Assembly: GCF_031769215.1 (NCBI RefSeq)
Contig: NW_026782030.1
Location: 1 to 64,000 of the forward strand
DNA from: Ylistrum balloti
Lineage: Eukaryota
DNA: 64,000 bases
Direction: 5' to 3'
A program made the translations under genes and the position numbers. How positions within the stretch are numbered: position 1 is the stretch's first letter; the number at the start of each line of letters is the position of its first letter. Of the stretch, positions 2,452-55,200 are shown piece by piece. Under the pieces are notes generated by a model. It was not told the DNA's origin. It did no database searches and saw nothing but the letters and a program-made list of their open reading frames with translations.

Positions 2452-3615
2452 TACAGTTTTTTCGTCGTTAACATTCACCTCACTTAACATTACTTCGTAC
2501 CGGTAAAAAGGTTTTTTCTAATATATACCTCCACAGGACGGTTGCTTAACATACATTGTTATAGTTGATAACTAATTCAATGATTCTATAATATTTTAAT
2601 TTCTTATTAGACTTGTCAGCAATTTCAAACATTCAAAAATCTCTTTATAATAAAGAAACCAGATGTGTCAGTGTGACATGAAAACCCTCCCTGGTAACCA
2701 ATGAAAATGTCCTTGTCATATATTATTTGAATAGTTGTACCCATACCTTTATCAATATGTGTTGGTGATTAGTTGAAGCAAGGCTCAAATCTACAGAATG
2801 AGCGTGATATGAAAGGGTTTTTTTTGTTTTGTTTTGTTTTTTGTTTTTTCTTTGTTTTTTTTTTCGCGTTGAAGTCCAACCATGTCATGAATAGGCCAGA
2901 GGACATTACAAGAGGCCGCAAATCCCATCAGCAGTTTTTGCAAATGATTGTGAAATAAGATCGGGAGTTTTGCCTGTTGATAGTAAAGAATATGAAGTAG
3001 AACCGGAGTTGTGTCTGTTGAGTTTGTGGTGAAGAATCTTAAATGAAATTGGAGACATAATTTTAGATTCTATGGCAAATAATTCTAAAAGAATTTTGCC
3101 GATTTCAGCTGAAACACACATTGGTAGAGATGGTGATATCAAATTTATACCCTGCTTACATGATCTAGGGTTAATGATATGAAAATATATCAAATAAAAG
3201 TTATATACAACAGAGAAAACAATACCATAAGTTACTAATCAAGATCATGATGGACACACAAAATGACAGATATCTAAAACCAGAATAATAAATTGTCAAA
3301 TATTGTTGCTCGTTTGCCATCTTTCATAAACTTCCACTCTAGATCGATCAGGCTCTGACGTTTGCTTATTTCCTTATATACCAAAATATACTGTTTCCGG
3401 GAGAATTTCTTAAAACATACCAAGATCAATGACAATTACTTTGCACACAAGCTTTTGACTGTAACGAATAATATCATGAGCGAATTCTTTCTTTTTTTCG
3501 CTTGATGGCAACTGACATTTCAATATCTGTCTTCACTAAAAAGTACATTGGAAAAAGCAAACGATGACAGGCAATGCCAGTTTTTAGGCCATTTCAATGC
3601 GGGAAGAAAAATGTA

Positions 3616-8449: not shown

Positions 8450-8501
8450 TTCCCAAGCGGGGAATCGAACCCCGGCCGCCGCGGTGAGAGCGCGGAATCC
8501 T
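8450..8501 (-). pseudogene. tRNA-Glu 3' part (nt 21-72), interrupted by Tx1 element A
   Basis: ttcccaagcg...gagcgcggaatcc(t) runs directly into a T11 tract (the element's poly(A) on the minus strand) instead of aaccactagacc. Confidence 0.95.
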
Positions 8502-8550
8502 TTTTTTTTTTCTTTAAAAATAAATCTTTTAATGTTCCCAGCGAATTGGA

Positions 8551-8574
8551 CCTTCGGGGTTGGGGCCCCGAAGG
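8551..8574 (-). promoter_or_regulatory. 3'UTR stem-loop of element A (9-bp stem, loop CCCCAA in RNA sense)
   Basis: ccttcgggg ttgggg ccccgaagg is a perfect inverted repeat, conserved by covariation with 14455-14478. Confidence 0.8.
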
Positions 8575-8730
8575 CTCCTCACAGTTCATATAAAATACAA
8601 ATATAAACAATTCATACAATACATAAAATCACAGGTTTGCTAAATAATAAAGAATCACATTTTTTAAAAATTGCGTTGATGCAAACATACAATGTTTACT
8701 AATACTGATGAAACAAATAACTTGACATAG

Positions 8731-11700
8731 TCATATAGATAAGACGTAGGAAGCTAAATTTACATTACTTAGAGAAAAGTCGACTTCCTTTAATAATTTA
8801 TTGTCAGCAACAATATATTTCTTGAACAAACTGCATTGTTTTTTCATCTGGTAGTAATGTTTGATATAATCAAAATACTTTCTGAAAGTATACTTAAAAA
8901 AGCCCTTCAGATTTAATTTAGACATCCCATTAACAACCAGATTACGCCTTCTAAGAATGCTAAAGCGTACTGTACCTAAAAGGAAGTTGATGAAAAAAGG
9001 ATTTGTTTGTTTAACCTTGCTAGTGTAACCCAGAAGTATAAGTTTACCAAGATAAACATCTGAAAGATAGGTCTGATCAGCATCGGAGAAAAGCTTCTTA
9101 CTTAATTTGTCAATGTAGGCCAAAAATTCTGCAAGGTCTGAACACTCAACAAACAGATGCTGTAGGGTTTCCTTCTCGGAATTGCACAATAGACAAGTGT
9201 CACTGTCAACTTTCCCTATTTTCTTTAACTTTTCCATTGTAAAAATAGTATTATGCACAATACGAAAATGAACATCAATGATGTCACAAGGTAGAAATTG
9301 CAAATACATAATGGAAAAGACGCGAGGAAGACAAACATTCTGAAAAATTTCTGACCAGTACCCCGAAGATTTAGGACATTTGAAGCAATAACGGATAAAA
9401 CAAGCATAAATATCACGAGTAGTTTTGGGGCGTAGCTGAATAGTAGTCCCATTTCCATCTTTGTAAGTAACACACAGCCCTGGCTCTGTTCTTCTATTTG
9501 TATGTACATTAGTTAAAATCACATCTTTATAATTGACTGGAATAGATTTCATAATAGTATCATAATGAGATAACAAGATATCATTAGAGATATCGAGGTT
9601 AGCTTCTTTAACTACCTTAGCTACTGTGCTTGAGGAGAGGAACTTTGACACAACTTCAAGCGTTAGATGCTTAACCTTTACAATACCCGCCCTAGCAAAA
9701 CACTCAATAAAAACAGGTTTCTCATTGTCCATAATGTTAGAGTTAAAAAACAAAGGCTGTTCATAAATGAAAAAGGTATCCATATTAAAACAAACCTTAT
9801 TTACTGCCTGAAAGGCATACCATGCTTTCAACATTTCGCGGTAAACAATAGGCACTGTTCTTAAATATTTATCAGGAAATTTACAATAAATTACTTCAGC
9901 ATCAAGATTTAAACCAAGTATTTTGTTGAAAAAATAGCTGCACATATTCTTCCAGACAGCAGTACAAGACGTGTCCAACCATCTAAATAAAAATTTTAAT
10001 CTGAAAGATCTCAATTTTAATTCAATGTCAGGTACATTTAAACCACCTTCCTTTCTTTTACCAATAATAGTGTCATAGGCTACTAAATGTGATCTACCAT
10101 GCCATAAAAAATCAATAGATAGTTTCTTGATATTACTAATAACTGACAGAGGAATAGTCTGTGAAGTTAGACAATACCAACACCTGGACATCAATAAGGA
10201 ACTGATTACAGTAGCTCTTCCTTGTATAGTCAATTGCCTCTGCGACCACATTCTAAGAATATTTTTAATAGACACAACTTTACTATCCCAGTTCTTTTCG
10301 TTACACATGTGTATATCTATACCGACAAATACACCCAACACACATATAACCTTATCACATAATTTGATACGTAGTTTTTCAAGTTCATCCATTGTGATAT
10401 TACCTTTACCAATACATAACATTTCGGACTTATCTTTATTTATCTTGGCACCAGAGCCCTTACTGTAGACTTCTAACAGGTTAAAAACATGTTTAAAAGT
10501 TTCCTTATTTCCAAGTGTCAACGTCGTGTCGTCTGCGTGTTGATACACCTTAGACTCAAATTCATTATGAGGAACTTTGATACCAGAAATATCTGGAGAC
10601 TTTAAAAACATATTCCCCAGAGGTTCCGCGGCCAAAACGTAAAGCATCGCCGAAATAGGACACCCTTGTCTCACTGAATTTCCAATAGAGATAAAATTTG
10701 TCAAATTACCATTATATTTGACAGAACTGGAGATTTTAGTGTAAAAAATCTTGATCCAATCAACGAAATTCTCACCAAAACCAAATTTTTTCAAAAGTTT
10801 AAATAAATACGGATGACTAACACGATCAAAAGCCTTTTCTTGATCAATTTTGAGGATGTACCCTTCAAGTTCCTCTTGATTTGTTAAATCAATGATATCA
10901 CGAACGCTAAAAATGGTGTCCGAAATATCCCGCCCTATAACACAGCACGACTGAAATTCTGAAATGATTGAGGGTAAAACAGACTTAAGGCGATCTGACA
11001 TTACCCGAGCAAGGATCTTGTAGTCTACATTAAGGAGACTAATTGGTCTCCAATTTTTCAGAAGAGACTTATCCCCCCTTTTCTTGTATACAAGGTTAAT
11101 AACACATCGTCTCATAGTTCTTGTCAATTCTTTTTCAGCCCAGATACTTTCTACTACCCGAGGAAAAACATATTTTAATTCATCAAAAAAGTTACAATAA
11201 AACTCAACAGTCAGGCCGTCCAAGCCGGGACTCTTACATTTGGACATAGTAGACAAAGCTTTTTGTATCTCATCAACAGTAATAGCAGAGTCACACTTAT
11301 CTCTATCCTCCACAGAGATAGTTTTGTCAATAAAAGATAAAAGATTATCAATATCATCATCATTTGTCTCAATACAATTATATAAATCATTATAAAAATT
11401 GAATATTTCATTAGACATTTCATCACCAGTTGTCAATATTTTCCCATCAACATCACGTAAACATTTTATAGAATTGCAGTTCTGTCTATATTTCTCCAGC
11501 TTTAAAAAATAACTGGTATTTTTATCACCATCAACGGCCCATTTACACTTAGACCTTAACACAGCACCATTACATCTCTCTTTTTCAAACTTTTCCAAAC
11601 TTTGTCGGAGCTCTTCATATTTAGTACAATCAAAAGGTTTACCATTGGCTATATCACAGGAAAATTCCTGTAGCTTATTTTGAATTTTATAATGTTCAGA

Positions 11701-12639
11701 CATCCGTTTTTTACTTCGATCCTTTCCATATATCTGAGAAAATCTCTTTATTTTAAATTTCAGATTATCCCACCACACTGAAGGTTCATCGATAAACAAT
11801 GAACATTTCCGTTCCTCAGAAATTAAATTTCTTATTTTAACATTATAATCTTCTTCAAGTAAAAACCAATTGTTCAAAATCCATATACCAGGGCCTCTTT
11901 CCTCAATACAAGTATCCAATTTCATTGTAACTAAAGAATGATCACTAAACGTTGTATCATTATAATAGATATTCTGCACATAGGTACTTAAATGTCTGGA
12001 AACCAAGAAGTAGTCGATTCTACTCTGTGACAAATTTCCATTACGTACCTGTTTACGGGAAAAAGCCGAACAATTTCTATTTCTACTGCGCCACAAATCA
12101 GAAACATTGCAAGTAAACATAAGGCTTTTTAATGAAGCCAGACTTGGGGTTGTATGATGTGCAGTAAATCCAGTCCTATCAAAACTGGAGAATGTGGAGT
12201 TAAAATCCCCACCAAAAATAATTTTATCTGCATCATCCGACAACCACTTTTTCAAATTATCAAAAAATATTTTTCTCTCACCATCAACATTTGGTGCATA
12301 AACATTAACTAAATCCCACTCTAAATTCTCAATGGATATTTTCAAACGTAAAACTCTCCCGTCATAACCCTCATACTGGATAACATTATTTTTCCATTTA
12401 TTAGAAATAAGGAACGCAACTCCCTTTCTGTGGTTAGTACTGTTATCATAAATAATTTTACCATTCCATAAATGTTTTATTTGATTTACAAAATCATCAT
12501 CCCAAAAGGTCTCTTGCAGGAAAGCAATATCACAAAAATTACTATTTACCAGTGCAAAAACACTTTTAACTTTATCCACATCTCTGAGGCCATTCACATT
12601 AAATGATACAAAACTAAGCATAATAATAGCAAAAAACAT
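8731..12639 (-). CDS. Tx1 ORF2, 1302 aa: APE endonuclease + reverse transcriptase + C-terminal CCHC motif
   Basis: APE motifs SFNVNG, LQET, NVYAPN, GGDFN, SRIDYFLVS, SDH. RT motifs KSPGLDGLTVEFY, WRPISLLNVDYKILA, DQEKAFDRV, VRQGCPIS, QHADD. C-terminal CLLC-x7-HLFVEC. No stops or frameshifts. Confidence 0.97.
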   Translation of the reverse strand: MFFAIIMLSFVSFNVNGLRDVDKVKSVFALVNSNFCDIAFLQETFWDDDFVNQIKHLWNGKIIYDNSTNHRKGVAFLISNKWKNNVIQYEGYDGRVLRLKISIENLEWDLVNVYAPNVDGERKIFFDNLKKWLSDDADKIIFGGDFNSTFSSFDRTGFTAHHTTPSLASLKSLMFTCNVSDLWRSRNRNCSAFSRKQVRNGNLSQSRIDYFLVSRHLSTYVQNIYYNDTTFSDHSLVTMKLDTCIEERGPGIWILNNWFLLEEDYNVKIRNLISEERKCSLFIDEPSVWWDNLKFKIKRFSQIYGKDRSKKRMSEHYKIQNKLQEFSCDIANGKPFDCTKYEELRQSLEKFEKERCNGAVLRSKCKWAVDGDKNTSYFLKLEKYRQNCNSIKCLRDVDGKILTTGDEMSNEIFNFYNDLYNCIETNDDDIDNLLSFIDKTISVEDRDKCDSAITVDEIQKALSTMSKCKSPGLDGLTVEFYCNFFDELKYVFPRVVESIWAEKELTRTMRRCVINLVYKKRGDKSLLKNWRPISLLNVDYKILARVMSDRLKSVLPSIISEFQSCCVIGRDISDTIFSVRDIIDLTNQEELEGYILKIDQEKAFDRVSHPYLFKLLKKFGFGENFVDWIKIFYTKISSSVKYNGNLTNFISIGNSVRQGCPISAMLYVLAAEPLGNMFLKSPDISGIKVPHNEFESKVYQHADDTTLTLGNKETFKHVFNLLEVYSKGSGAKINKDKSEMLCIGKGNITMDELEKLRIKLCDKVICVLGVFVGIDIHMCNEKNWDSKVVSIKNILRMWSQRQLTIQGRATVISSLLMSRCWYCLTSQTIPLSVISNIKKLSIDFLWHGRSHLVAYDTIIGKRKEGGLNVPDIELKLRSFRLKFLFRWLDTSCTAVWKNMCSYFFNKILGLNLDAEVIYCKFPDKYLRTVPIVYREMLKAWYAFQAVNKVCFNMDTFFIYEQPLFFNSNIMDNEKPVFIECFARAGIVKVKHLTLEVVSKFLSSSTVAKVVKEANLDISNDILLSHYDTIMKSIPVNYKDVILTNVHTNRRTEPGLCVTYKDGNGTTIQLRPKTTRDIYACFIRYCFKCPKSSGYWSEIFQNVCLPRVFSIMYLQFLPCDIIDVHFRIVHNTIFTMEKLKKIGKVDSDTCLLCNSEKETLQHLFVECSDLAEFLAYIDKLSKKLFSDADQTYLSDVYLGKLILLGYTSKVKQTNPFFINFLLGTVRFSILRRRNLVVNGMSKLNLKGFFKYTFRKYFDYIKHYYQMKKQCSLFKKYIVADNKLLKEVDFSLSNVNLASYVLSI

Positions 12640-13935
12640 TCAAGTGCTTTTAAGTTTTTTAGTTTTCTTTTTCCTTTGAGGTTTGTGGACCTTTCCAGAA
12701 TCAACACGTGACTTTAAAAATTCCCGCGAACGCAAAATGGAATCAGTCACTAGAGCACCCTCTACCTCGTCCTCCTCACTTACATCAGAACCCTTGCTAT
12801 CTGGCCACATCGACCCAGAAATAGGTACAGGAGTACATGAGCCATCAAAATCTATGATGTCACCAAAGCAAACATCCCCATTAGGGGCGAGATTACCATC
12901 TGCCATATCTGTGTCCTTCTCTAACTTTTCAGGTACAGTAATGTTGGGATTAACCTGCGAGACCGTGACAACCTCTGAAACCGTGTTATTACTTTCAATA
13001 TGCTCAACCGGAACATTCACCTGTATACACTCTGCATTAACTTCCTCATCTCCATCCAAATCCTGTAATTTCTCACTGACGACATTTATCTGTGTGTTAT
13101 CGCTACCTGTGTAATCACCGCAGTCAAACATGTCACACTTGCACGAATCCAACGTTTCCTTGCATTTGTTACATTGTTCACGGCTACCAAAACAAATACA
13201 GTCATACCGATTACACCCCGTGCACAATCGTATGGCATTGTCCCGCCTCGGCGCGCGCGAACAATCACACTCAAACCTCACCTCACCACATCGGGTACAC
13301 GGCTCAGTCGTACATGCACGTTTGAAATGCCCCTGGGCATTGCATCGGAAGCACTTAAACTGTGGACACTGACGAAACAGGTGTTGGTCACTATAACACA
13401 GAGTGCAAACTTTCACCTGGTTGTCGTGTATAACACGAAAGTAATCATTCCCGAATTTGATACTGTAGGGTAACGATTTCAGAGATGGTGGAAACTTTAC
13501 CCTAACATATCTTGTACCATCCGCTATCTGAGTTCCTTTGTAAAATCGTCGCTTAATAGGCGAAACAATTTCAATGTCCAGACTTTCAAGCTTTTCAAGG
13601 ATATCGTCATCAGATATATATGCTGGTAGATATAAAAAGCTCACCATCAGAAACTTCTGTGTTAAATCATAACACTCGTATGTCCTACCTTCAATATCAA
13701 TTCCCTGCAATAACATGTTCGTCATTGCACGGCAATCGAGAGTGACCTCGTATAGGTTCCCAGATTTAGGGACACACGCCAAAACGGTTCCATCCCCACA
13801 CAACTGAGTAATGGTATCAATAACCTTGCCAGCCTTCACAACTTTATTATCCAAAATGTCAACACAAACAGTATTTTCTTTTAAATAGTGTCTTTTTTCA
13901 CTTTGTTTATTACGAGAGGCGTCCTGAGACGCCAT
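12640..13935 (-). CDS. Tx1 ORF1, ~431 aa gag-like nucleic-acid-binding protein
   Basis: The track start at 13989 is TTG; the first ATG is at 13935 (gagATGG, MASQD). Tx1-type VSFLYLPAYISD...GTRYV region, CCHC knuckles CTLCYSDQHLFRQC and CFRCNAQGHFKRAC, acidic linker, basic C-terminus. Confidence 0.92.
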   Translation of the reverse strand: MASQDASRNKQSEKRHYLKENTVCVDILDNKVVKAGKVIDTITQLCGDGTVLACVPKSGNLYEVTLDCRAMTNMLLQGIDIEGRTYECYDLTQKFLMVSFLYLPAYISDDDILEKLESLDIEIVSPIKRRFYKGTQIADGTRYVRVKFPPSLKSLPYSIKFGNDYFRVIHDNQVKVCTLCYSDQHLFRQCPQFKCFRCNAQGHFKRACTTEPCTRCGEVRFECDCSRAPRRDNAIRLCTGCNRYDCICFGSREQCNKCKETLDSCKCDMFDCGDYTGSDNTQINVVSEKLQDLDGDEEVNAECIQVNVPVEHIESNNTVSEVVTVSQVNPNITVPEKLEKDTDMADGNLAPNGDVCFGDIIDFDGSCTPVPISGSMWPDSKGSDVSEEDEVEGALVTDSILRSREFLKSRVDSGKVHKPQRKKKTKKLKST

Positions 13936-14355
13936 CTCGCCCCGGTAAACACCGGTAACAAAAATGTCAACAAAACTGACGAAATACAATCAATTGTCAC
14001 ATCATCAATATTTTGTTGTAAACACGAATATCCAATGATTATATAAGTCAGAAAAGTAGGGTTAAAAACCCCGTCTTACCACCGATGTTTGACGATTATA
14101 CAACAGGTAAACAAACGACGTCCATTGACCTTGAAATCATCACCGGAACCCAAAACATACCAAGTTCAATGACCATTACTTTGCATACAAGCTTTTGACT
14201 GTAAGGAATAATATGATGAGCTCATTGTTTCTTTTTTTTCGCTTGATGACAACTGACATTTCAATATCTGTCTTCACTACAAGTACACAGGAAAAAGCAA
14301 ACGATGACGGGCAATGCCAGTTTTTAGGCCATTTCAATGCGGGAAGAAAAATGTA

Positions 14356-14407
14356 TTCCCAAGCGGGGAATCGAACCCCGGCCGCCGCGGTGAGAGCGCG
14401 GAATCCT
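14356..14407 (-). pseudogene. tRNA-Glu 3' part (nt 21-72), interrupted by Tx1 element B
   Basis: Same junction as at 8501: gagcgcggaatcc followed by T10. Confidence 0.95.
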
Positions 14408-15166
14408 TTTTTTTTTCTTGTAAAAATAAAAATTTTATTATCCCAGCAATAGGGTCTCAAGGGTTGGGGCCCTTGAGATTCCTCACAGTGTAATCATTTC
14501 ATAATCATGTATTAAAAATAGATAAAAGGTAAAAAGAAAAATCACATGTTTCATAACAAAGTAACCATAACTATCACAGACGAAAGTTTTACAAATTAAC
14601 TGAGACACGATCGTCAATCACAGATACAATATTGTTATCACAAATAAAGTATTTTCGGAAAAGTGAAACATTGTTTTTCTTTCGATAGTGATTAAAAGCA
14701 TAGTTGATAAATTTTTTGACTGTAAACTTAAAGAATCGCAATATTGGAACACTACCTTCATTTAACATGACCATATTTCTTCTTTTGTAAATACAAAATC
14801 GTGCCACACTCAAAACAAAGTTTATGAAGTACGAGTTAACATTTTTTGAATTTCTGCCACAGCCTAAAAGAACTAGCCAATCATAATTGAGTACATTCAC
14901 AATTTCCGAAGGCACTCTAATAAACAAACTATCCAACATATCGGTTAAAAAGACGTTAAGGGTAGATAACTCTGGACATCCAATAAATAAATGAAAAAGA
15001 TTACCTGGTGGCTACTGGCATACCGGACATGTATTGAATCTGACATACCACACTTCATCAATTTCTTTTTCGTAAAAATAGCGTTATGTGCAACTTTAAA
15101 ATGGAGCTCGACACACTCAGCCGGATAATAAGGCACGTGTACCATTCTATAAATACTGTCGACCTC
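14408..15166 (-). mobile_element. 5'-truncated Tx1 element B (different family), decayed, 13-14 bp TSD
   Basis: Encodes only the ORF2 C-terminus (VHVPYYPAECVELHFKVAHNAIFT...CPVCQ*PPGNLFHLFIGC...FINFVLSVARFCIYKRRN) with one frameshift and one in-frame TAG. AATAAA plus poly(A). TSD gagcgcggaatcc(t) at 14394-14407 and 15167-15180. Confidence 0.93.
14455..14478 (-). promoter_or_regulatory. 3'UTR stem-loop of element B (9-bp stem, loop CCCCAA in RNA sense)
   Basis: tctcaaggg ttgggg cccttgaga is a perfect inverted repeat. Confidence 0.8.
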
Positions 15167-15200
15167 GAGCGCGGAATCCTAACCACTAGACCACTTGGGA
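15167..15200 (-). pseudogene. tRNA-Glu 5' part (nt 1-34, includes the TSD)
   Basis: gagcgcggaatcctaaccactagaccacttggga, followed by the normal upstream flank. Confidence 0.95.
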
Positions 15201-15805
15201 CATGTGTATTGAGATGACTTGACTGTTTGTGCTTGACGGTCTCGTAACAATTTGCAGCAGGAGCAAAGATAACGGTTCCTCTAACGTTACACATTGGAAC
15301 TGTGTACACTGTTACTCTTGTGGTGGCTAAGGCGGATGGTTCGTCATGTACGTATGGGATGTGGAACAACTATACATAAACGAATCAAGTGAATAGCACA
15401 GTTAACGGAGTTTTAACTAGAAGATTCCTTGAGTTAGACGTTGTCAGTCTGAATCCGAGTAGTGTTGATGTTATCGACCAATCTGTTTTCACAGGTTAGT
15501 TCTAGCTCGAAATTCACCTACACAGATATAGTGTTTTAAAAGTTCACGAACACATCACTCAGATGTTCTTGGAAAATTGATGGAGATCATCTATGAATAT
15601 CATTTAATGTTTTCGTAATCTGGGGAAGCAAAATATGAATTTAATTGAAAACGCCACACCGTCATTGATTGAAATAAACATAACTTAGTACTGAACTGGC
15701 GAATCTTATTCGAAATACATGGATAACTTCAACGCGAATTCAATTCCACAATGATATTATCATTAAAGTGAAAACGTTTAGCATGATTTGACAGCAACTT
15801 ATCAG

Positions 15806-49200: not shown

Positions 49201-52200
49201 ATAGCTGAATTAATAGTGATAGCATACTGAACTTTACTGGCGAAAAGCCCAGCAGTACATCTTACCCGGTCATATTATACTAACATCAGGCGAATTAGTT
49301 GTTACACTGCTTCAACACTGACCGTTAATCAAAGAGTATTCACTTTCTATTCAGTCCGGTATGTTTCTGCTAGAAAACAGACCCCAAAGCGTGAACATCA
49401 GGACGTACAAACAAGATGGCAACTTTACTAGATATAAATGAGGACAAGACAGTATACAATTTCATTATTTTGTATCGTATAGCAAATCAATGTTCATGAT
49501 ACATTGCATAGATAAATATCAAAACAGTGCATTAGCTGTGACATTAAGAACTCCGTAAACATGCGATGTTATATCTGTCATTCACATGTATTTTTATTAC
49601 GTAAAAGCTCTTTAATAAGTTAACGTATTTAAGTATCGTGATATAAAATTCTTCGATGTTTTTTGTATGAAAATTGTTGAATTTTCTGTCTTCTTAATTG
49701 CTGAGCAAGTATCCAAAAATCCTACGGTGACCAGCTGGTTATTATTAGTATGTAGCTGTTCTACTCGGCACTCATCCTCGATACTCTAGTGGTTACGATC
49801 ACAAGAAATGAAAGTTTGTCAGACCTATTTCTAATCAAAGATGTATGGGATGGATCTTCCTCATATTTCATATCAACATTGTCACTTGTTGCATTCGTTA
49901 GATTTTGGTGCCGATCAGAAGAACAAAATGACTGCCAGCTGGTTATCTTGGATTTCAGTATTTGTCAACCTTAGTTCATTCAAAGTACAGGCTAGATATT
50001 TTTCAAATTTCACATGAGCGCTCCCCTTTCTGTTATAAGTGCCATGTTGATATAGGGAGTTCTAGGGGAAACAAAATGACATACAGGCGGCCATCTTCGA
50101 TTTAGGCAATGGATGTGTGTTCCTCTCTTTCGTGAGAAGCTTGAGATAAACCTGTTTTCAAATTTATATAAAGGCTCCCCTTGGACCATAGTTGTGTACA
50201 AGTTTTTAATTATCTGAAAAGTAAAATGACCAACAGGCGACTATCTTGGATTTCGACAGAAAAATTGTTATCTCTATTTTTTCGAGATCTGAAATGAAGA
50301 AAAATGAATAAAAACAAAATGGTTGATTGATTACCATCTTGGATTCGGCAACTAAACGCGGGAATTTTCAAAGTTCATAGCACGGAAAATAAAACAGAGG
50401 AGACGAGAGAAAAGAAAGATTAGACGATGGTGGGAGCCAAGATCCCTTTGGAATCAATTGTTGAAAATGATACATTAAAATAACATTACACCATGTTTTT
50501 ACACCTGTACACAGAATATTCTCTGTAATCAGGGACTAATAACCTCTATTTTGAGCTAATTCAAAAATTACTTTATATCCGCCGTTTCAGTTTTTGCAAG
50601 CAGGATATTTTCGCGTTAATTGATATTTGAAAGCGGGAGAATATTATGTGTCTAGGTGTGATTTTTTTGCTCTCTGTAGATGAGGTATTGATTACAGCAT
50701 AAAGGGAAAAACAGACATCATTAGGTTCTTTCCGTTAAAAAAACTCTCATAAAAGAAATGTACAAGGTCTTTTTGAATGTGTTACAATTTCTCGAGTCTT
50801 ATTCAATCACATTTCTAAACGGCATGTTTCTAACACACAATACCTATTCTAAATGGCAATAATGAATATACAGATCTGTAGAAAAACGATAATAAAAGGA
50901 GTGGTATGAAATAATAATACATGTGGAAAAAAACACACAAGTTCTAACAAAAAATCCAGAAGTAGATGTATTTCACCGACGGAACTTGTTCTAACAGTTA
51001 TGAAGTAGGTTTCCATGGTCACTTCCAATTCAAATGACAACAATATTTTTAACTTTTACTTTATTTCCTAGGTAACGCCAACACAGACACGGCATTGGCT
51101 AATGGTGTTTGTGGAACTCCGTCCGCTCCAACACCATATTCTACCACTCAGCGTTACGCACGCGTGGAAATGGTCTCTGATAATTCCATCCAGAAGGCGG
51201 GCTTTCAAATTGACGTCATAGCTACTAAAGACAATTGTGAGTAAATACATATAACCTTACTAATTGTGAGTCATACATATTTCCTTACTCATTGTGAGTC
51301 AATATGTATTACCTTACTCATTGTGAGTCAATACGTATTACCTTCCTCATTTTGAGTCAATACGTATTACCTTTCTCATTGTGAGTCAATACGTATTACC
51401 TTCCTCATTGTGAGTCAATACGTATTACCTTCCTCATTGTGAGTCAATACATATTACCTTACTCATTGTGAGTCAATACATATTAACTTACTCATAATGA
51501 GTCAAAACGTATTACCTTCCTCATTGTGAGTCAATACGTATTACCTTACTCATTGTGAGTCAATACGTATTACCTTACTCATTGTGAGTCAATACGTATT
51601 ACCTTCCTCATTGTGAGTCAATACATATTACCTCACTTATTGTGAGTCAATACAGATTACCTTACTCATTGTGAGTCAATAAATATTACCTTACTCATTG
51701 TGAGTCAATAAATATTGCTTTACTTATTGTGAGTCAATACATATTACCTTACCTATTGTGAGTCAATGGCATGTGTTACTTACATTTGTCTTCTCCTTTG
51801 CCTTTTAAACTATTTGTAAATATTTATTTTGTCTCCATATTCAAAGTACACCAGGTGACTGTTTTGATCCTCTCCTTTCTGACATCCCATTCCTCTTGGC
51901 CTTTTTTGGTGTCAGCTACGTGTTTTAGAATAAGGAATAGGCGCAGTAATCCCCGAATTTCTGGTCTTTGAATTGGTATTATCGTGTTATTACTCTTACA
52001 ATTATCGAGGTAAAGATATGGATAACAGTGGAGATAGATACTTTGGAAGATATATCTTAAGAGAGACATATACTAGGGGAGACATATTAGGGGAGATGGA
52101 TACTAGGGGAGACCGATACTTTGGGAGACATATACTAGGGGAGATGGATACTAGGGGAAGACATATATTAGGGGAGATGGATACTAGGGGAGACCGATAC

Positions 52201-55200
52201 TTTGGGAGGCATATACTAGGGGAGATGGATACTAGGGGGAGACATATATTAGGGGAGACATATTAGGGGAGATGGATACTAGGGGAGACATATTAGGGGA
52301 GATGGATACTAGGGGAGACCGATACTTTGGGAGACATATACTAGGGGAGATCGATACTTTGGGAGACATATATTAGGGGAGACATATTAGGGGAGATGGA
52401 TACTAGGGGAGACCGATACTTTGGGAGACATATACTAGGGGATATGGATACTTTGGGAGATATATATTAGGGGAGACATATTAGGGGAGATGGATACTAG
52501 GGGAGACCGATACTTTGGGAGACATATACTAGGGGAGATGGATACTTTGGGAGACATATATTTGGGGAGACATATTAGGGGAGATGGATACTAGGGGAGA
52601 CCGATACTTTGGGAGACATATACTAGGGGAGATGGATACTTTGGGAGACATATATTTGGGGAGACATATTAGGGGAGATGGATACTAGGGGAGACCGATA
52701 CTTTGGGAGACATATACTAGGGGAAATGGATACTTTGGGAGACATATATTAGGGGAGACATATTAGGGGAGAAGGATACAAGGGGAGACAGATACCAGGG
52801 GAGATGGATACTAGTTGAGATAAATACTACGGAGAGATAGATATTAGAGGAAAATAGATACTAGGAGGAGATGGATACTAGGGGAGATAGATACAAAGGG
52901 AGATGTATACAAGGTGAGATGGATAATTGGGGACATGCTAGGGGAGGTAAATACTAGGGGAGGTGGATACAAGAGGAGGCGGATACCAGAGGAGATGTAT
53001 ACCATTGGAGGCGGTTACTAGAGGAGATGAAAACTTTACTCTAACAAATGTTTATAACATTACCAACTATGGATACTGCCTACGATAACAAGAATATAAA
53101 AACATAGCTTTCAGTAACTTATTAGCTTTTAACTTTTTTTCAAACCTATGATAACAACATGTCTTAATGCAACATGTGCAGGCCCACATCAGATAACATG
53201 GATGTTAAGTATGTGTTTATGAAAACATGATGCTGTCTACATTTCTTAAAAACAATATTTTTTGTATACGTAAATTTGAAATTCAGGTATTCGTTGTGTA
53301 TACAATACGTCTGTACTGACACTTTAATACATGTTTTTTCTTAAATATAATTTATCATTACACCGAAGGAAGGATCGTTCAACCCTGCTTTACTGTCCTT
53401 ATCATACCACTGTTACTTGTTGAACATCCTGTCCTACCGCCCTGTGTCATGATATATACCCTATCTTTCTGACCTGTCTCATAATTTATATTCCATGTTA
53501 CCACACTGTCTAATGATATAATTTCACTGTCTTTCTGACCTGTCTCATAATTTATATTCCATGTTACCACACTGTCTAATGATATAATTTCACTGTCTTA
53601 CTGCCCTGTGTCATGATATATACCCTATCTTTTTGACCTGTCTCATAATTTATATTCCATGTTACCACACTGTCTAATGATATAATTTCACTGTCTTACT
53701 GCCCTGTGTCATGATATATACCCTATCTTTTTGACCTGTCTCATAATTTATATTCCATGTTACCACACTGTCTAATGATATAATTTCACTGTCTTACTGC
53801 CCTGTGTCATGATATATACCCTATCTTTCTGACCTGTCTTATAATTTATATCCCATATTACCACACTGTCTAATGATATAATTTCACTGTCTTACTGCCC
53901 TGTGTCATGATATATACCCTATCTTTCTGACCTGTCTCATAATTTATATTCCATGTTACCACACTGTCTAATGATATAATTTCACTGTCTTACTGCCCTG
54001 TGTCATGATATATTTTCCCTATCTTTTTGACCTGTCTCATAATTTATATTCCATGTTACCACACTGTCTAATGATATAATTTCACTGTCTTACTGCCCTG
54101 TGTCATGATATATACCCTATCTTTCTGACCTGTCTCATAATTTATATTCCATGTTACCACACTCTCTAATGATATAATTTCACTGTCTTACTGCCCTGTG
54201 TCATGATATATACCCTATCTTTCTGACCTGTCTCATAATTTATATTCCATGTTACCACACTGTCTAATGATATAATTTCACTGTCTTACTGCCCTGTGTC
54301 ATGATATATTTTCCCTATCTTTTTTACCTGTTTCATAATTTATATTCCATGTTACCACACTGTCTAATGATATAATTTCACTGTCTTACTGCCCTGTGTC
54401 ATGATATATACCCTATCTTTCTGACCTGTTTCATAATTTATATTCCATGGTGCCACACTGTCTAATGATATAATTTCACTGTCTTACTGCCCTGTGTCAT
54501 GATATATTTTCCCTATCTTTTTGACCTGTCTCATAATTTATATTCCCTGTTTCCAAACTGTTTCATAATAAATATTCCACATGTTACCGCCCTTACTGAT
54601 CAGGTCTTAAAACATCAATTTAAATAATTTAAAAACTGAAAGGCTTATGGCAAATGAATTTTCATTCAATACATTGATCGTTGAATCAAATTATTGAGCA
54701 AAATACCGACAAAATAAAAGATAAAGAAATGCAATTAATGCATTTAAAAATCGGAACAAAATTAGACACAGCAACAACAGGAAACATAGCGCAACCTGAT
54801 GGACGAGACACATTTCTGTATACGAACGTTACTAATGAGTTATGTACCAGACTCGAGGATAAATAGGGATGCCCCGAATAGTAGAAGACACTAGCTCCAT
54901 GTAAACAAAAACAGATAAACATATACTGACGAATACACTGCTAAAAAAAATCCCGGCCATACAATACAAATACAATTCATTAAGTCTTAATTTACATCAA
55001 ACATGTTCATTTTTCGGATTAAAGTTTCTTAGACGCGCATTCATGACAGGAAATTAATGAATTATTTTTTATTAAGAAAATTAAAGGAAAATTCAGCAAA
55101 TTAAAATCTTTAATTAGCCCTATAATTTTTTTTTTTTTTTTTTTTTGTTGATGAACAAATTAAGGGGATTTTCTCTAAGTTACGGGATATTCGGTATACA

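What the first reader, a model, noticed from the sequence alone, without database searches (positions are those of the whole stretch)
14394..15180. A second, deeply diverged family uses the same site and defines a 13-14 bp staggered cut ending at anticodon position 34
Seen: element B is flanked by gagcgcggaatcc(t) on both sides, i.e. tRNA nt 21/22-34 (A)GGATTCCGCGCTC, so second-strand cleavage falls between C34 and T35 of the anticodon. By hand alignment, ~86 C-terminal ORF2 residues are only ~35-40% identical to element A. B has a frameshift and a TAG inside the zinc knuckle, while A is intact. Inference: target specificity was kept through a long divergence, with successive families occupying the same site (B older, A recent).
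Basis: partly seen in the sequence, partly recalled or inferred. Interest (0 to 1): 0.82.

Follow-up and report, generated by a model that had tools for sequence, protein, structure and literature searches.

The report
Second LINE family inside tRNA-Glu genes
A 760-base stump of a jumping gene (a Tx1-type LINE) sits inside a scallop tRNA-Glu gene at exactly the same nucleotide as an unrelated-looking full-length LINE nearby; both belong to a large group of LINEs that insert inside tRNA genes, but the stump is a young copy, not an old one.

Summary
Element B (14407-15166, minus strand) splits a tRNA-Glu(CTC) gene. It is flanked by a perfect 13-bp duplication, or 14 bp counting one ambiguous T, equal to tRNA nt (21)22-34. 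Removing B and one repeat restores the gene exactly. B's ORF2 tail is 33-44% identical to element A at protein level and 55% at DNA level, and A has the identical 3' junction. The TAG and the frameshift are present.

- "B older" fails. In four public runs from two studies, contigs up to 6 kb at high depth cover all of B and continue 5' of it. They differ from B only at the two lesions.
- Kept specificity is unproven. Relatives at 41-48% identity end in tRNA-Asn, Lys, Leu, Thr, Tyr, Gly and His genes, most at the same A21|G22 position. Closely related families use different tRNAs, and one family has Lys and Tyr flanks on a single contig. The tree puts B with other-target families, but A+B as sisters is not rejected (p=0.11).
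- A single copy gives one TSD. A mussel relative has a 16-17 bp TSD.

More distant kin sit at the U2 snRNA site used by Keno, so these are Tx1-type LINEs. The scan had already noted Tx1 LINEs inside other tRNA genes on other pieces of this genome.

The parts
14356..14406 (-). tRNA-Glu(CTC) nt 22-72, the part downstream of B on the tRNA strand
   Evidence: Identical to 1106-1156 of the intact gene.
14394..14406 (-). Target-site duplication, copy next to the poly(A) tail (tRNA nt 22-34)
   Evidence: Exact 13-mer, followed by T at 14407.
14407..15166 (-). Element B: 760-bp 5'-truncated copy of a Tx1-type LINE (family B)
   Evidence: Poly(A), TSD and an ORF2 C-terminal remnant. Public contigs continue 5' beyond 15166.
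14407..14416 (-). A10 tail of B
   Evidence: Read directly.
14455..14478 (-). 3'-UTR hairpin (9-bp stem, 6-nt loop) shared with A at 8551-8574 through compensatory changes
   Evidence: Alignment and arms checked. This is the subject of another finding (s1-236929).
14589..15166 (-). ORF2 C-terminal remnant of B, including the stop codon at 14589-14591
   Evidence: Translations and BLASTP to A and to 60+ relatives.
15012..15014 (-). In-frame TAG inside the CX2CX8HX4C zinc knuckle
   Evidence: It lies within the 15002-15013 cluster where all four runs' contigs read other letters.
15026..15035 (-). Frame break: one base missing relative to the multi-copy contigs
   Evidence: Frame change. The contigs carry one extra letter behind 15034 (table 4).
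15167..15179 (-). Target-site duplication, copy at B's truncated 5' end (tRNA nt 22-34)
15167..15200 (-). tRNA-Glu(CTC) nt 1-34, the part upstream of B on the tRNA strand
   Evidence: Identical to 1144-1177.
8501..14150 (-). Element A (context): full-length LINE with ORF1 12640-13935, ORF2 8731-12639 and an A11 tail joined to the same tRNA-Glu nucleotide. The 5' end is approximate.

Best explanation
B is a 5'-truncated copy of a distinct Tx1-type (L1-group, APE endonuclease) LINE family, inserted by target-primed reverse transcription. The proposed steps are as follows. The element's endonuclease nicked the antisense strand of a tRNA-Glu(CTC) gene opposite nt 21/22, or 20/21 if the ambiguous T belongs to the target. 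Reverse transcription started at the short A-tail and stopped early, 760 nt in. The sense strand was broken 13-14 bp downstream, between nt 34 and 35, which gave the nt 22-34 duplication. A and B belong to one large clade whose members insert inside tRNA genes in the tRNA's own orientation, most of them at this same D-arm position. The tRNA species chosen differs from family to family. Family B is not an old, extinct predecessor of A: full-length, near-identical copies appear to be present in several individuals. Shown: the anatomy, the divergence from A, the shared junction, the relatives' targets, and the long high-depth contigs. Inferred: the order of the nicks, recognition by the endonuclease, and current activity of family B. 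Whether A and B inherited or separately acquired the tRNA-Glu target is open; I lean towards a labile target choice.
For: The TSD, poly(A), truncation and exact restoration of the gene are. A carries APE, RT and zf-RVT domains plus ORF1 CCHC knuckles. Its ORF2 matches human L1 ORF2p over residues 9-896 at E 6e-70, and its best endonuclease match is 2v0r 'LTX', E 3e-18 against 2e-12 for the native L1 endonuclease 1vyb. From my own knowledge, not checked here, LTX is an L1 endonuclease carrying a Tx1L loop. Kin at 32-33% identity join poly(A) to TCTGTTCTTATCAG... of U2 snRNA, which is the published Keno site (PMC6136364). Relatives' 3' junctions: Asn-GTT, Lys-TTT, Leu-CAG, Thr-AGT and Tyr-GTA at A21|G22; Gly-CCC at 22/23; Gly-TCC near 24/25; His-GTG at 9/10 with a 16-17 bp TSD. 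The tree places B (SH-aLRT 99) with Leu-, Gly-, Asn- and Lys-targeting families and places A with P0001. Contigs of 6058, 5586, 3958 and 1123 nt at depth 185-227 cover all of B, and those in three runs run on 5' of 15166. Adjoining spacer contigs have depth 15-52. No other fragment of this clade lies in the 64-kb window: 2 of 6 tRNA-Glu genes are occupied and 0 of 5 tRNA-Leu genes.
Against: Only one B copy with flanks could be read, so site specificity of family B rests on one insertion plus the clade's general behaviour. Contig depth is not a copy number, and contigs drop rare variants. Logan contigs stop at the A-run, so the flanks of other B copies were not seen. B's endonuclease is missing from the window and could not be compared with A's. 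Tx1 membership rests on kinship to Keno-like loci and to L1 ORF2p, not on a tree with named Tx1 references. The His, Gly-CCC and Gly-TCC families do not nick at nt 21/22.
Confidence: 0.78

Rival explanations
1. One reading: tRNA-Glu specificity was inherited unchanged from the common ancestor of A and B, and families succeed each other at the site, B being the old one and A the recent one.
For: The same tRNA and the same nucleotide are used. Strict parsimony needs one change fewer if Glu is ancestral. The AU test does not reject A+P0001+B as one clade (lnL difference 8.7, p=0.109).
Against: The best tree puts B with Leu-, Gly-, Asn- and Lys-targeting families. Families about 0.28 substitutions per site apart (His versus Thr) already differ in target, against 1.5 between A and B. 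The succession part is contradicted: B has a perfect TSD and a pure A10 tail, and long high-depth contigs differ from it only at the two lesions.
Confidence: 0.2
2. Neither family is tRNA-Glu-specific. Each recognises a short D-arm motif, or the tRNA gene's chromatin, and hits several tRNA species. Two hits in tRNA-Glu then reflect this abundant local array.
For: One contig of the P0012 family has tRNA-Lys(TTT) nt 1-38 at its 5' end and tRNA-Tyr(GTA) nt 22 onward at its 3' end; both tRNAs share GGTA|GAGC at the junction. The nick position just 3' of the A box is shared by six different tRNA species. An earlier scan note (s1-234354) reached the same view for mussel relatives.
Against: The five tRNA-Leu(CAG) genes interleaved in the same array are all unoccupied, although a relative (P0029) uses exactly that tRNA. 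The Lys/Tyr contig may be a metagenome assembly chimera. Only two insertions are available in the window.
Confidence: 0.3
3. B is a decayed copy of A.
For: Same site, same orientation, and similar last 100 nt (72% identity).
Against: DNA identity is 55% overall and 51% in the coding part. Protein identity is 33-44%, and B is closer to P0005, P0014 and P0023 (42-46%) than to A. Public contigs show a separate full-length family.
Confidence: 0.01
4. The TAG and the frameshift are errors of the reference assembly, not real lesions of this copy.
For: In all four runs every contig over 15002-15013 and 15034 reads the other letters, and none carries the window's letters. The runs hold only 0.89-0.91 of the sampled words, even in the best holder. 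Nine changes within 12 bp is an odd mutation pattern.
Against: Contigs collapse low-depth variants into the high-depth path, so a single truncated copy with private changes would not be visible (a stated limit of the tool).
Confidence: 0.3

Closest known systems
Keno (Tx1-type LINE specific for U2 snRNA genes; Kojima & Fujiwara 2004, as cited in PMC6136364 and PMC4640811)
   Same: APE-type LINE that inserts at one nucleotide inside a multicopy small-RNA gene. Loci 32-33% identical to A end at the published Keno site.
   Different: The target is U2 snRNA rather than a tRNA gene, and the identity is only about one third.
Dewa (zebrafish Tx1-type LINE)
   Same: A Tx1-type element tied to tandem tRNA arrays.
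   Different: It is described as targeting the spacer of tRNA-Leu (PMC3706591). A and B cut inside the tRNA coding sequence.
LIN25_SM, LIN15_SM and NeSL-1_TV (NeSL-related LINEs specific for tRNA-Glu, tRNA-Arg and tRNA-Pro; PMC4640811)
   Same: Non-LTR retrotransposons specific for tRNA genes, one of them for tRNA-Glu.
   Different: NeSL-related LINEs are restriction-like-endonuclease (RLE) elements (PMC4640811). A has an APE endonuclease, so this is parallel evolution and not kinship.
Dada DNA transposons (PMC3706591, PMC8869645)
   Same: Family-by-family targeting of particular tRNA or snRNA genes at fixed internal positions.
   Different: They use a DDE transposase, make 6-7 bp TSDs and involve no reverse transcription.
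Human LINE-1 ORF2p (PDB 8uw3, 8sxt, 9k6g)
   Same: Endonuclease plus RT core aligns over about 890 residues at E 6e-70. TPRT hallmarks are present.
   Different: By general knowledge, L1 is only loosely specific (TTTT/AA), whereas A and B hit one nucleotide of one gene.

Membership tests
Tx1-type (L1-group) APE non-LTR retrotransposon | ORF2 with an N-terminal APE endonuclease followed by an RT | tested here: met
   Met for A: Exo_endo_phos E 2e-14 and RVT_1 E 2e-34; L1 ORF2p E 6e-70. B lacks this part in the window; it was inferred from homology of B's tail to full-length kin.
Tx1-type (L1-group) APE non-LTR retrotransposon | C-terminal Cys/His zinc knuckle in ORF2 | tested here: met
   zf-RVT E 4e-7 in A. 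A CX2CX8HX4C spacing is present in both A and B; in B it is interrupted by the TAG.
Tx1-type (L1-group) APE non-LTR retrotransposon | Groups with named Tx1 elements in an RT phylogeny | tested here: inconclusive
   No named Tx1 reference sequence was available. Indirect support comes from kin sitting at the Keno site in U2 and from the best endonuclease hit being the chain named 'LTX'.
Tx1-type (L1-group) APE non-LTR retrotransposon | TPRT hallmarks: A-tail, target-site duplication, 5' truncation | tested here: met
   A10 tail, 13/14-bp TSD, and truncation relative to contigs of up to 6 kb.
Sequence-specific (site-specific) LINE | Independent insertions at the same nucleotide of the target | tested here: met
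   A (8500/8501) and B (14406/14407) join the same tRNA-Glu nucleotide in two different gene copies. This holds across families, not within family B.
Sequence-specific (site-specific) LINE | Most copies of the same family lie at that site and few lie elsewhere | tested here: inconclusive
   Only one flanked copy of B and one of A are available. No other fragment lies in the 64-kb window. Public contigs stop at the A-run.
Dewa | Inserts in the spacer of tRNA-Leu arrays | tested here: not met
   A and B interrupt the tRNA-Glu coding sequence at nt 21/22.
NeSL / LIN tRNA-specific LINEs | Restriction-like endonuclease C-terminal to the RT | tested here: not met
   A has an N-terminal APE domain and no restriction-like domain was reported by Pfam.

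The most novel reading that the evidence does not exclude
A and B are two tips of a large radiation of APE-type LINEs, present in bivalves and possibly beyond. Their members nearly all nick tRNA genes at one structural position (A21|G22, just 3' of the A box) and re-target from one tRNA species to another over short evolutionary distances. That would make them a naturally re-programmable, site-specific insertion system for multicopy genes, and I found no paper describing it in the library searched.
Probability: 0.35. Interest if true: 0.72.

Novelty: new member of a known kind. Interest (0 to 1): 0.5.

Why it matters
Site-specific LINEs such as R2, R1, Keno and TRAS are models for how a retrotransposon recognises DNA, and they are being developed as tools for targeted gene insertion. 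If this clade holds, it offers dozens of related endonucleases that cut the same structural spot in different tRNA genes. That is a natural series for mapping which residues read which bases. For this genome, it means tRNA arrays are being eroded by at least two apparently live families at once: 2 of the 6 tRNA-Glu copies in this window are occupied. The narrower claim of a second family at the same nucleotide is a modest addition to that picture.

Tried and rejected
- A word-based protein search restricted to A's residues 1000-1302 found nothing. The whole-protein search worked.
- Neither A nor a full-length B is in the protein collection, so other scallop copies could not be fetched by protein. 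For that reason I did not spend the large representative search.
- Contigs for P0014, P0001, P0006 and P0027 stop before or inside the A-run. P0060 had no DNA available. The flank of P0033 is unreadable low-quality sequence.
- No TSD could be found for L002, L003, L005, L007 or L093, because those contigs lack a tRNA 5' part.
- The AU test of A+B monophyly was not significant.
- The metagenome scan returned mostly distant kin at 27-33% identity and only two clade members.
- Five literature searches found Dewa, the NeSL/LIN elements and Dada, but no paper on APE-type LINEs inside tRNA genes. Repbase itself could not be searched.
- B as a decayed copy of A was rejected on identity.
- I built no family-B consensus. 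The read tool returns differences rather than contig sequences, and I only describe them.

Full report
**Setting.** The first 19 kb of the window is a tandem array of tRNA-Glu(CTC) genes on the minus strand and tRNA-Leu(CAG) genes on the plus strand, with a unit of about 2.5 kb. Four tRNA-Glu genes are intact and two are interrupted. Earlier notes of this scan call the genome a saucer scallop.

**The observation.**
- The 13-mer GAGCGCGGAATCC lies at 14394-14406 and 15167-15179, each time followed by T. Only 0.01 matches are expected by chance.
- On the tRNA strand this 13-mer is nt 22-34, with A21 ambiguous. The anticodon CTC occupies nt 34-36.
- Joining 14356-14406 to 15180-15200 gives the intact gene letter for letter.
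- The insert (14407-15166) has the tRNA's orientation and ends in A10 next to the downstream repeat.
- It holds the last ~190 codons of an ORF2. The frame breaks near 15026-15035, and a TAG at 15012-15014 sits inside a CX2CX8HX4C knuckle.

**B is not A.**
- Element A (8501 to about 14150) is full length. ORF2 has 1302 aa with APE, RT and zf-RVT domains, and ORF1 has two CCHC knuckles.
- B's protein remnant is 33% identical to A over 135 aa and 44% over 32 aa.
- DNA identity is 55% overall and 51% in the coding part. It rises to 72% in the last 100 nt, where a 9-bp-stem hairpin is kept through compensatory changes. That hairpin is the subject of another finding (s1-236929).
- A's A11 tail joins the same tRNA-Glu nucleotide, at 8500/8501.
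- A has no 5' repeat. Its 5' end abuts array spacer about 200 bp from the next tRNA-Glu (agreeing with note s1-237030). Only the first-strand site is therefore shown to be shared.

**What the elements are.**
- A's ORF2 aligns with human L1 ORF2p over residues 9-896 at E 6e-70.
- The best isolated endonuclease match is PDB 2v0r, named 'LTX', ahead of the native L1 endonuclease. From my own knowledge, not checked here, LTX is an L1 endonuclease carrying a Tx1L loop.
- A word search found about 47 full-length proteins 41-48% identical to A, then groups at 36-40%, 32-33% and about 29%. They come from Mytilus genomes and from metagenome or Logan assemblies.
- Four metagenome loci at 32-33% identity join their A-tail to TCTGTTCTTATCAGCTTAAT of U2 snRNA. 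This is the published target of the Tx1-type element Keno (PMC6136364).
- A and B are therefore Tx1-type LINEs, the group that already holds most known APE-type elements specific for small-RNA genes (PMC4640811).

**Where the relatives sit.** I fetched the DNA around relatives and read what follows the A-tail.

| Relative | Locus | tRNA gene | Junction |
|---|---|---|---|
| P0023 | L002 | Asn(GTT) | A21\|G22 |
| P0005 | L003 | Lys(TTT) | A21\|G22 |
| P0029 | L005 | Leu(CAG) | A21\|G22 |
| near-identical to P0006 | L007 | Thr(AGT) | A21\|G22 |
| near-identical to P0012 | L008 | Tyr(GTA), with its intron | A21\|G22 |
| P0042 (Mytilus edulis) | L093 | Gly(CCC) | one nt further on |
| P0007 | L095 | Gly(TCC) | about nt 24/25 |
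| P0015 (M. edulis) | L087 | His(GTG), inside a His array | nt 9/10 |

- In every case the element has the tRNA's orientation. The nt 21/22 calls for the loci where only the 3' flank is present rest on the standard tRNA D-arm numbering, since the 5' side was not on those contigs.
- The P0015 element's 5' junction follows nt 25/26, so its TSD is 16-17 bp.
- The nucleotide shared by A and B is thus largely a clade-wide habit: nicking the antisense strand just 3' of the A box, at a TA step in six of the ten families. It is not something peculiar to these two families.
- TSD length varies: 13-14 bp here and 16-17 bp in the His family. Other scan notes report 18 bp for an iMet insertion (s1-240622, not tested by me).
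- One copy cannot define the family's stagger.

**Is the tRNA-Glu target inherited?**
- An IQ-TREE tree of 51 rows puts A with P0001 (SH-aLRT 99). It puts B in a separate 12-row clade (99) with the Leu-, Gly-TCC-, Asn- and Lys-targeting families. A FastTree of 92 rows agrees.
- Targets change over short distances. The His and Thr families are about 0.28 substitutions per site apart, and Lys and Asn about 0.5. A and B are 1.5 apart.
- Contig L008 carries tRNA-Lys(TTT) nt 1-38 at the element's 5' end and tRNA-Tyr(GTA) at its 3' end. Either one family uses both tRNAs, which share GGTA|GAGC at the junction, or the assembler merged two copies.
- B contributes only 190 aa, and holding A+P0001+B together costs just 8.7 lnL units (AU p=0.109). 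Descent from a Glu-targeting ancestor therefore cannot be excluded.
- My reading: the nick position is conserved over a long divergence, while the origin of the shared tRNA species is unresolved and the target is labile.

**Age of B.**
- Four public DNA runs from two studies hold 0.89-0.91 of B's sampled words.
- Laid on 14250-15350, each run has one long contig covering all of 14408-15166: 6058, 5586, 3958 and 1123 nt, at depth 185-227. Contigs of the adjoining spacer have depth 15-52.
- The contigs run on beyond 15166 into sequence absent from the window. A full-length family B therefore exists, and its copies are alike enough to assemble as one path.
- The contigs differ from the window copy at nine clustered positions (15002-15013, which include the TAG) and by one extra letter behind 15034, where the frame breaks. 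One run shows a single further difference.
- The two lesions are thus private to this truncated copy, or they are errors of the reference. Contigs cannot tell which, because they drop rare variants.
- Together with the perfect TSD and the pure A10 tail, this contradicts 'B older, A recent'.
- Depth is not a copy number, and I did not see the flanks of other B copies.

**Specificity within the window.** A tblastn search with A and seven relatives finds no other fragment of this clade in the 64 kb. Two of six tRNA-Glu genes are occupied and none of five tRNA-Leu(CAG) genes, although a relative uses that very tRNA. This is suggestive, but it rests on only two insertions.

**Comparison with the literature.**
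- The searched papers describe Dewa, a Tx1-type element in the spacer of tRNA-Leu (PMC3706591).
- They describe NeSL/LIN elements, which carry a restriction-like endonuclease, specific for tRNA-Pro, tRNA-Arg and tRNA-Glu (PMC4640811).
- They describe Dada DNA transposons inside tRNA genes (PMC3706591, PMC8869645).
- I found no paper on APE-type LINEs inside tRNA coding sequences. Repbase could not be searched, and most subscription journals are not in the library, so this absence is weak evidence.
- The scan itself had already noted Tx1 LINEs in tRNA-Lys, tRNA-Gly and tRNA-iMet genes on other pieces of this genome (s1-234354, s1-240622, s1-234342).

**Verdict.** The feature is real, and B is correctly identified as a second, deeply diverged family at the same nucleotide. 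It is a new member of a known kind, namely Tx1-type LINEs specific for small-RNA genes. The evolutionary account needs correcting: family B appears young and multi-copy, the shared position is a property of the whole clade, and retention of the tRNA-Glu target is unproven.

Noticed in passing
L002 7023-7032, L003 4425-4434, L005 6086-6093, L007 6113-6122, L008 7624-7633, L087 7338-7347, L093 8915-8925, L095 (A7); window 8501-8511 and 14407-14416: A-tails are short and nearly uniform (7-11 A) in all ten families. In many they are preceded by AAAGAT or AAAG. This suggests the A-run is templated by the element rather than added by polyadenylation.
   Followed up: no
L008 1427-1465 and 7634-7710: One element has tRNA-Lys(TTT) nt 1-38 at its 5' end and tRNA-Tyr(GTA) nt 22 onward at its 3' end. 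Either the family uses two tRNA species, or two copies recombined, or the assembly is chimeric.
   Followed up: partly
L001 ~170-215, L002 ~180-225, L095 ~205-250, L087 ~1660-1710, L008 ~1635-1680, L093 ~3085-3130: A conserved inverted repeat of the type CCCCTTCACC...GGTGAAAGGGGGG lies just upstream of the ORF1 start in many relatives. It may be a 5'-UTR hairpin.
   Followed up: no
window 13936-14355: A's 5' end abuts array spacer about 200 bp from the next tRNA-Glu. tRNA-Glu nt 1-21, a tRNA-Leu gene and about 2.2 kb of spacer are missing (nearly one array unit), and there is no TSD.
   Followed up: partly
window 15035-15103 (public contigs of 409 nt): A low-depth contig (about 21-27) is 87% alike over this conserved ORF2 stretch and diverges on both sides. 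It points to a third related family in the same species.
   Followed up: no
L057 5290-5302, L058 5826-5834, L062 5681-5688, L070 5825-5833: Keno-like Tx1 elements are joined to U2 snRNA at the published Keno site in metagenome contigs.
   Followed up: partly
L093 11966-12009: A weak type I hammerhead ribozyme match (26 bits, below the gathering score; E 0.034) lies 3 kb downstream of the Mytilus element.
   Followed up: no
window 52001-53000: A 1-kb stretch has GC 0.44 and GC skew +0.59, flanked by stretches with skew about -0.29. It was not examined.
   Followed up: no
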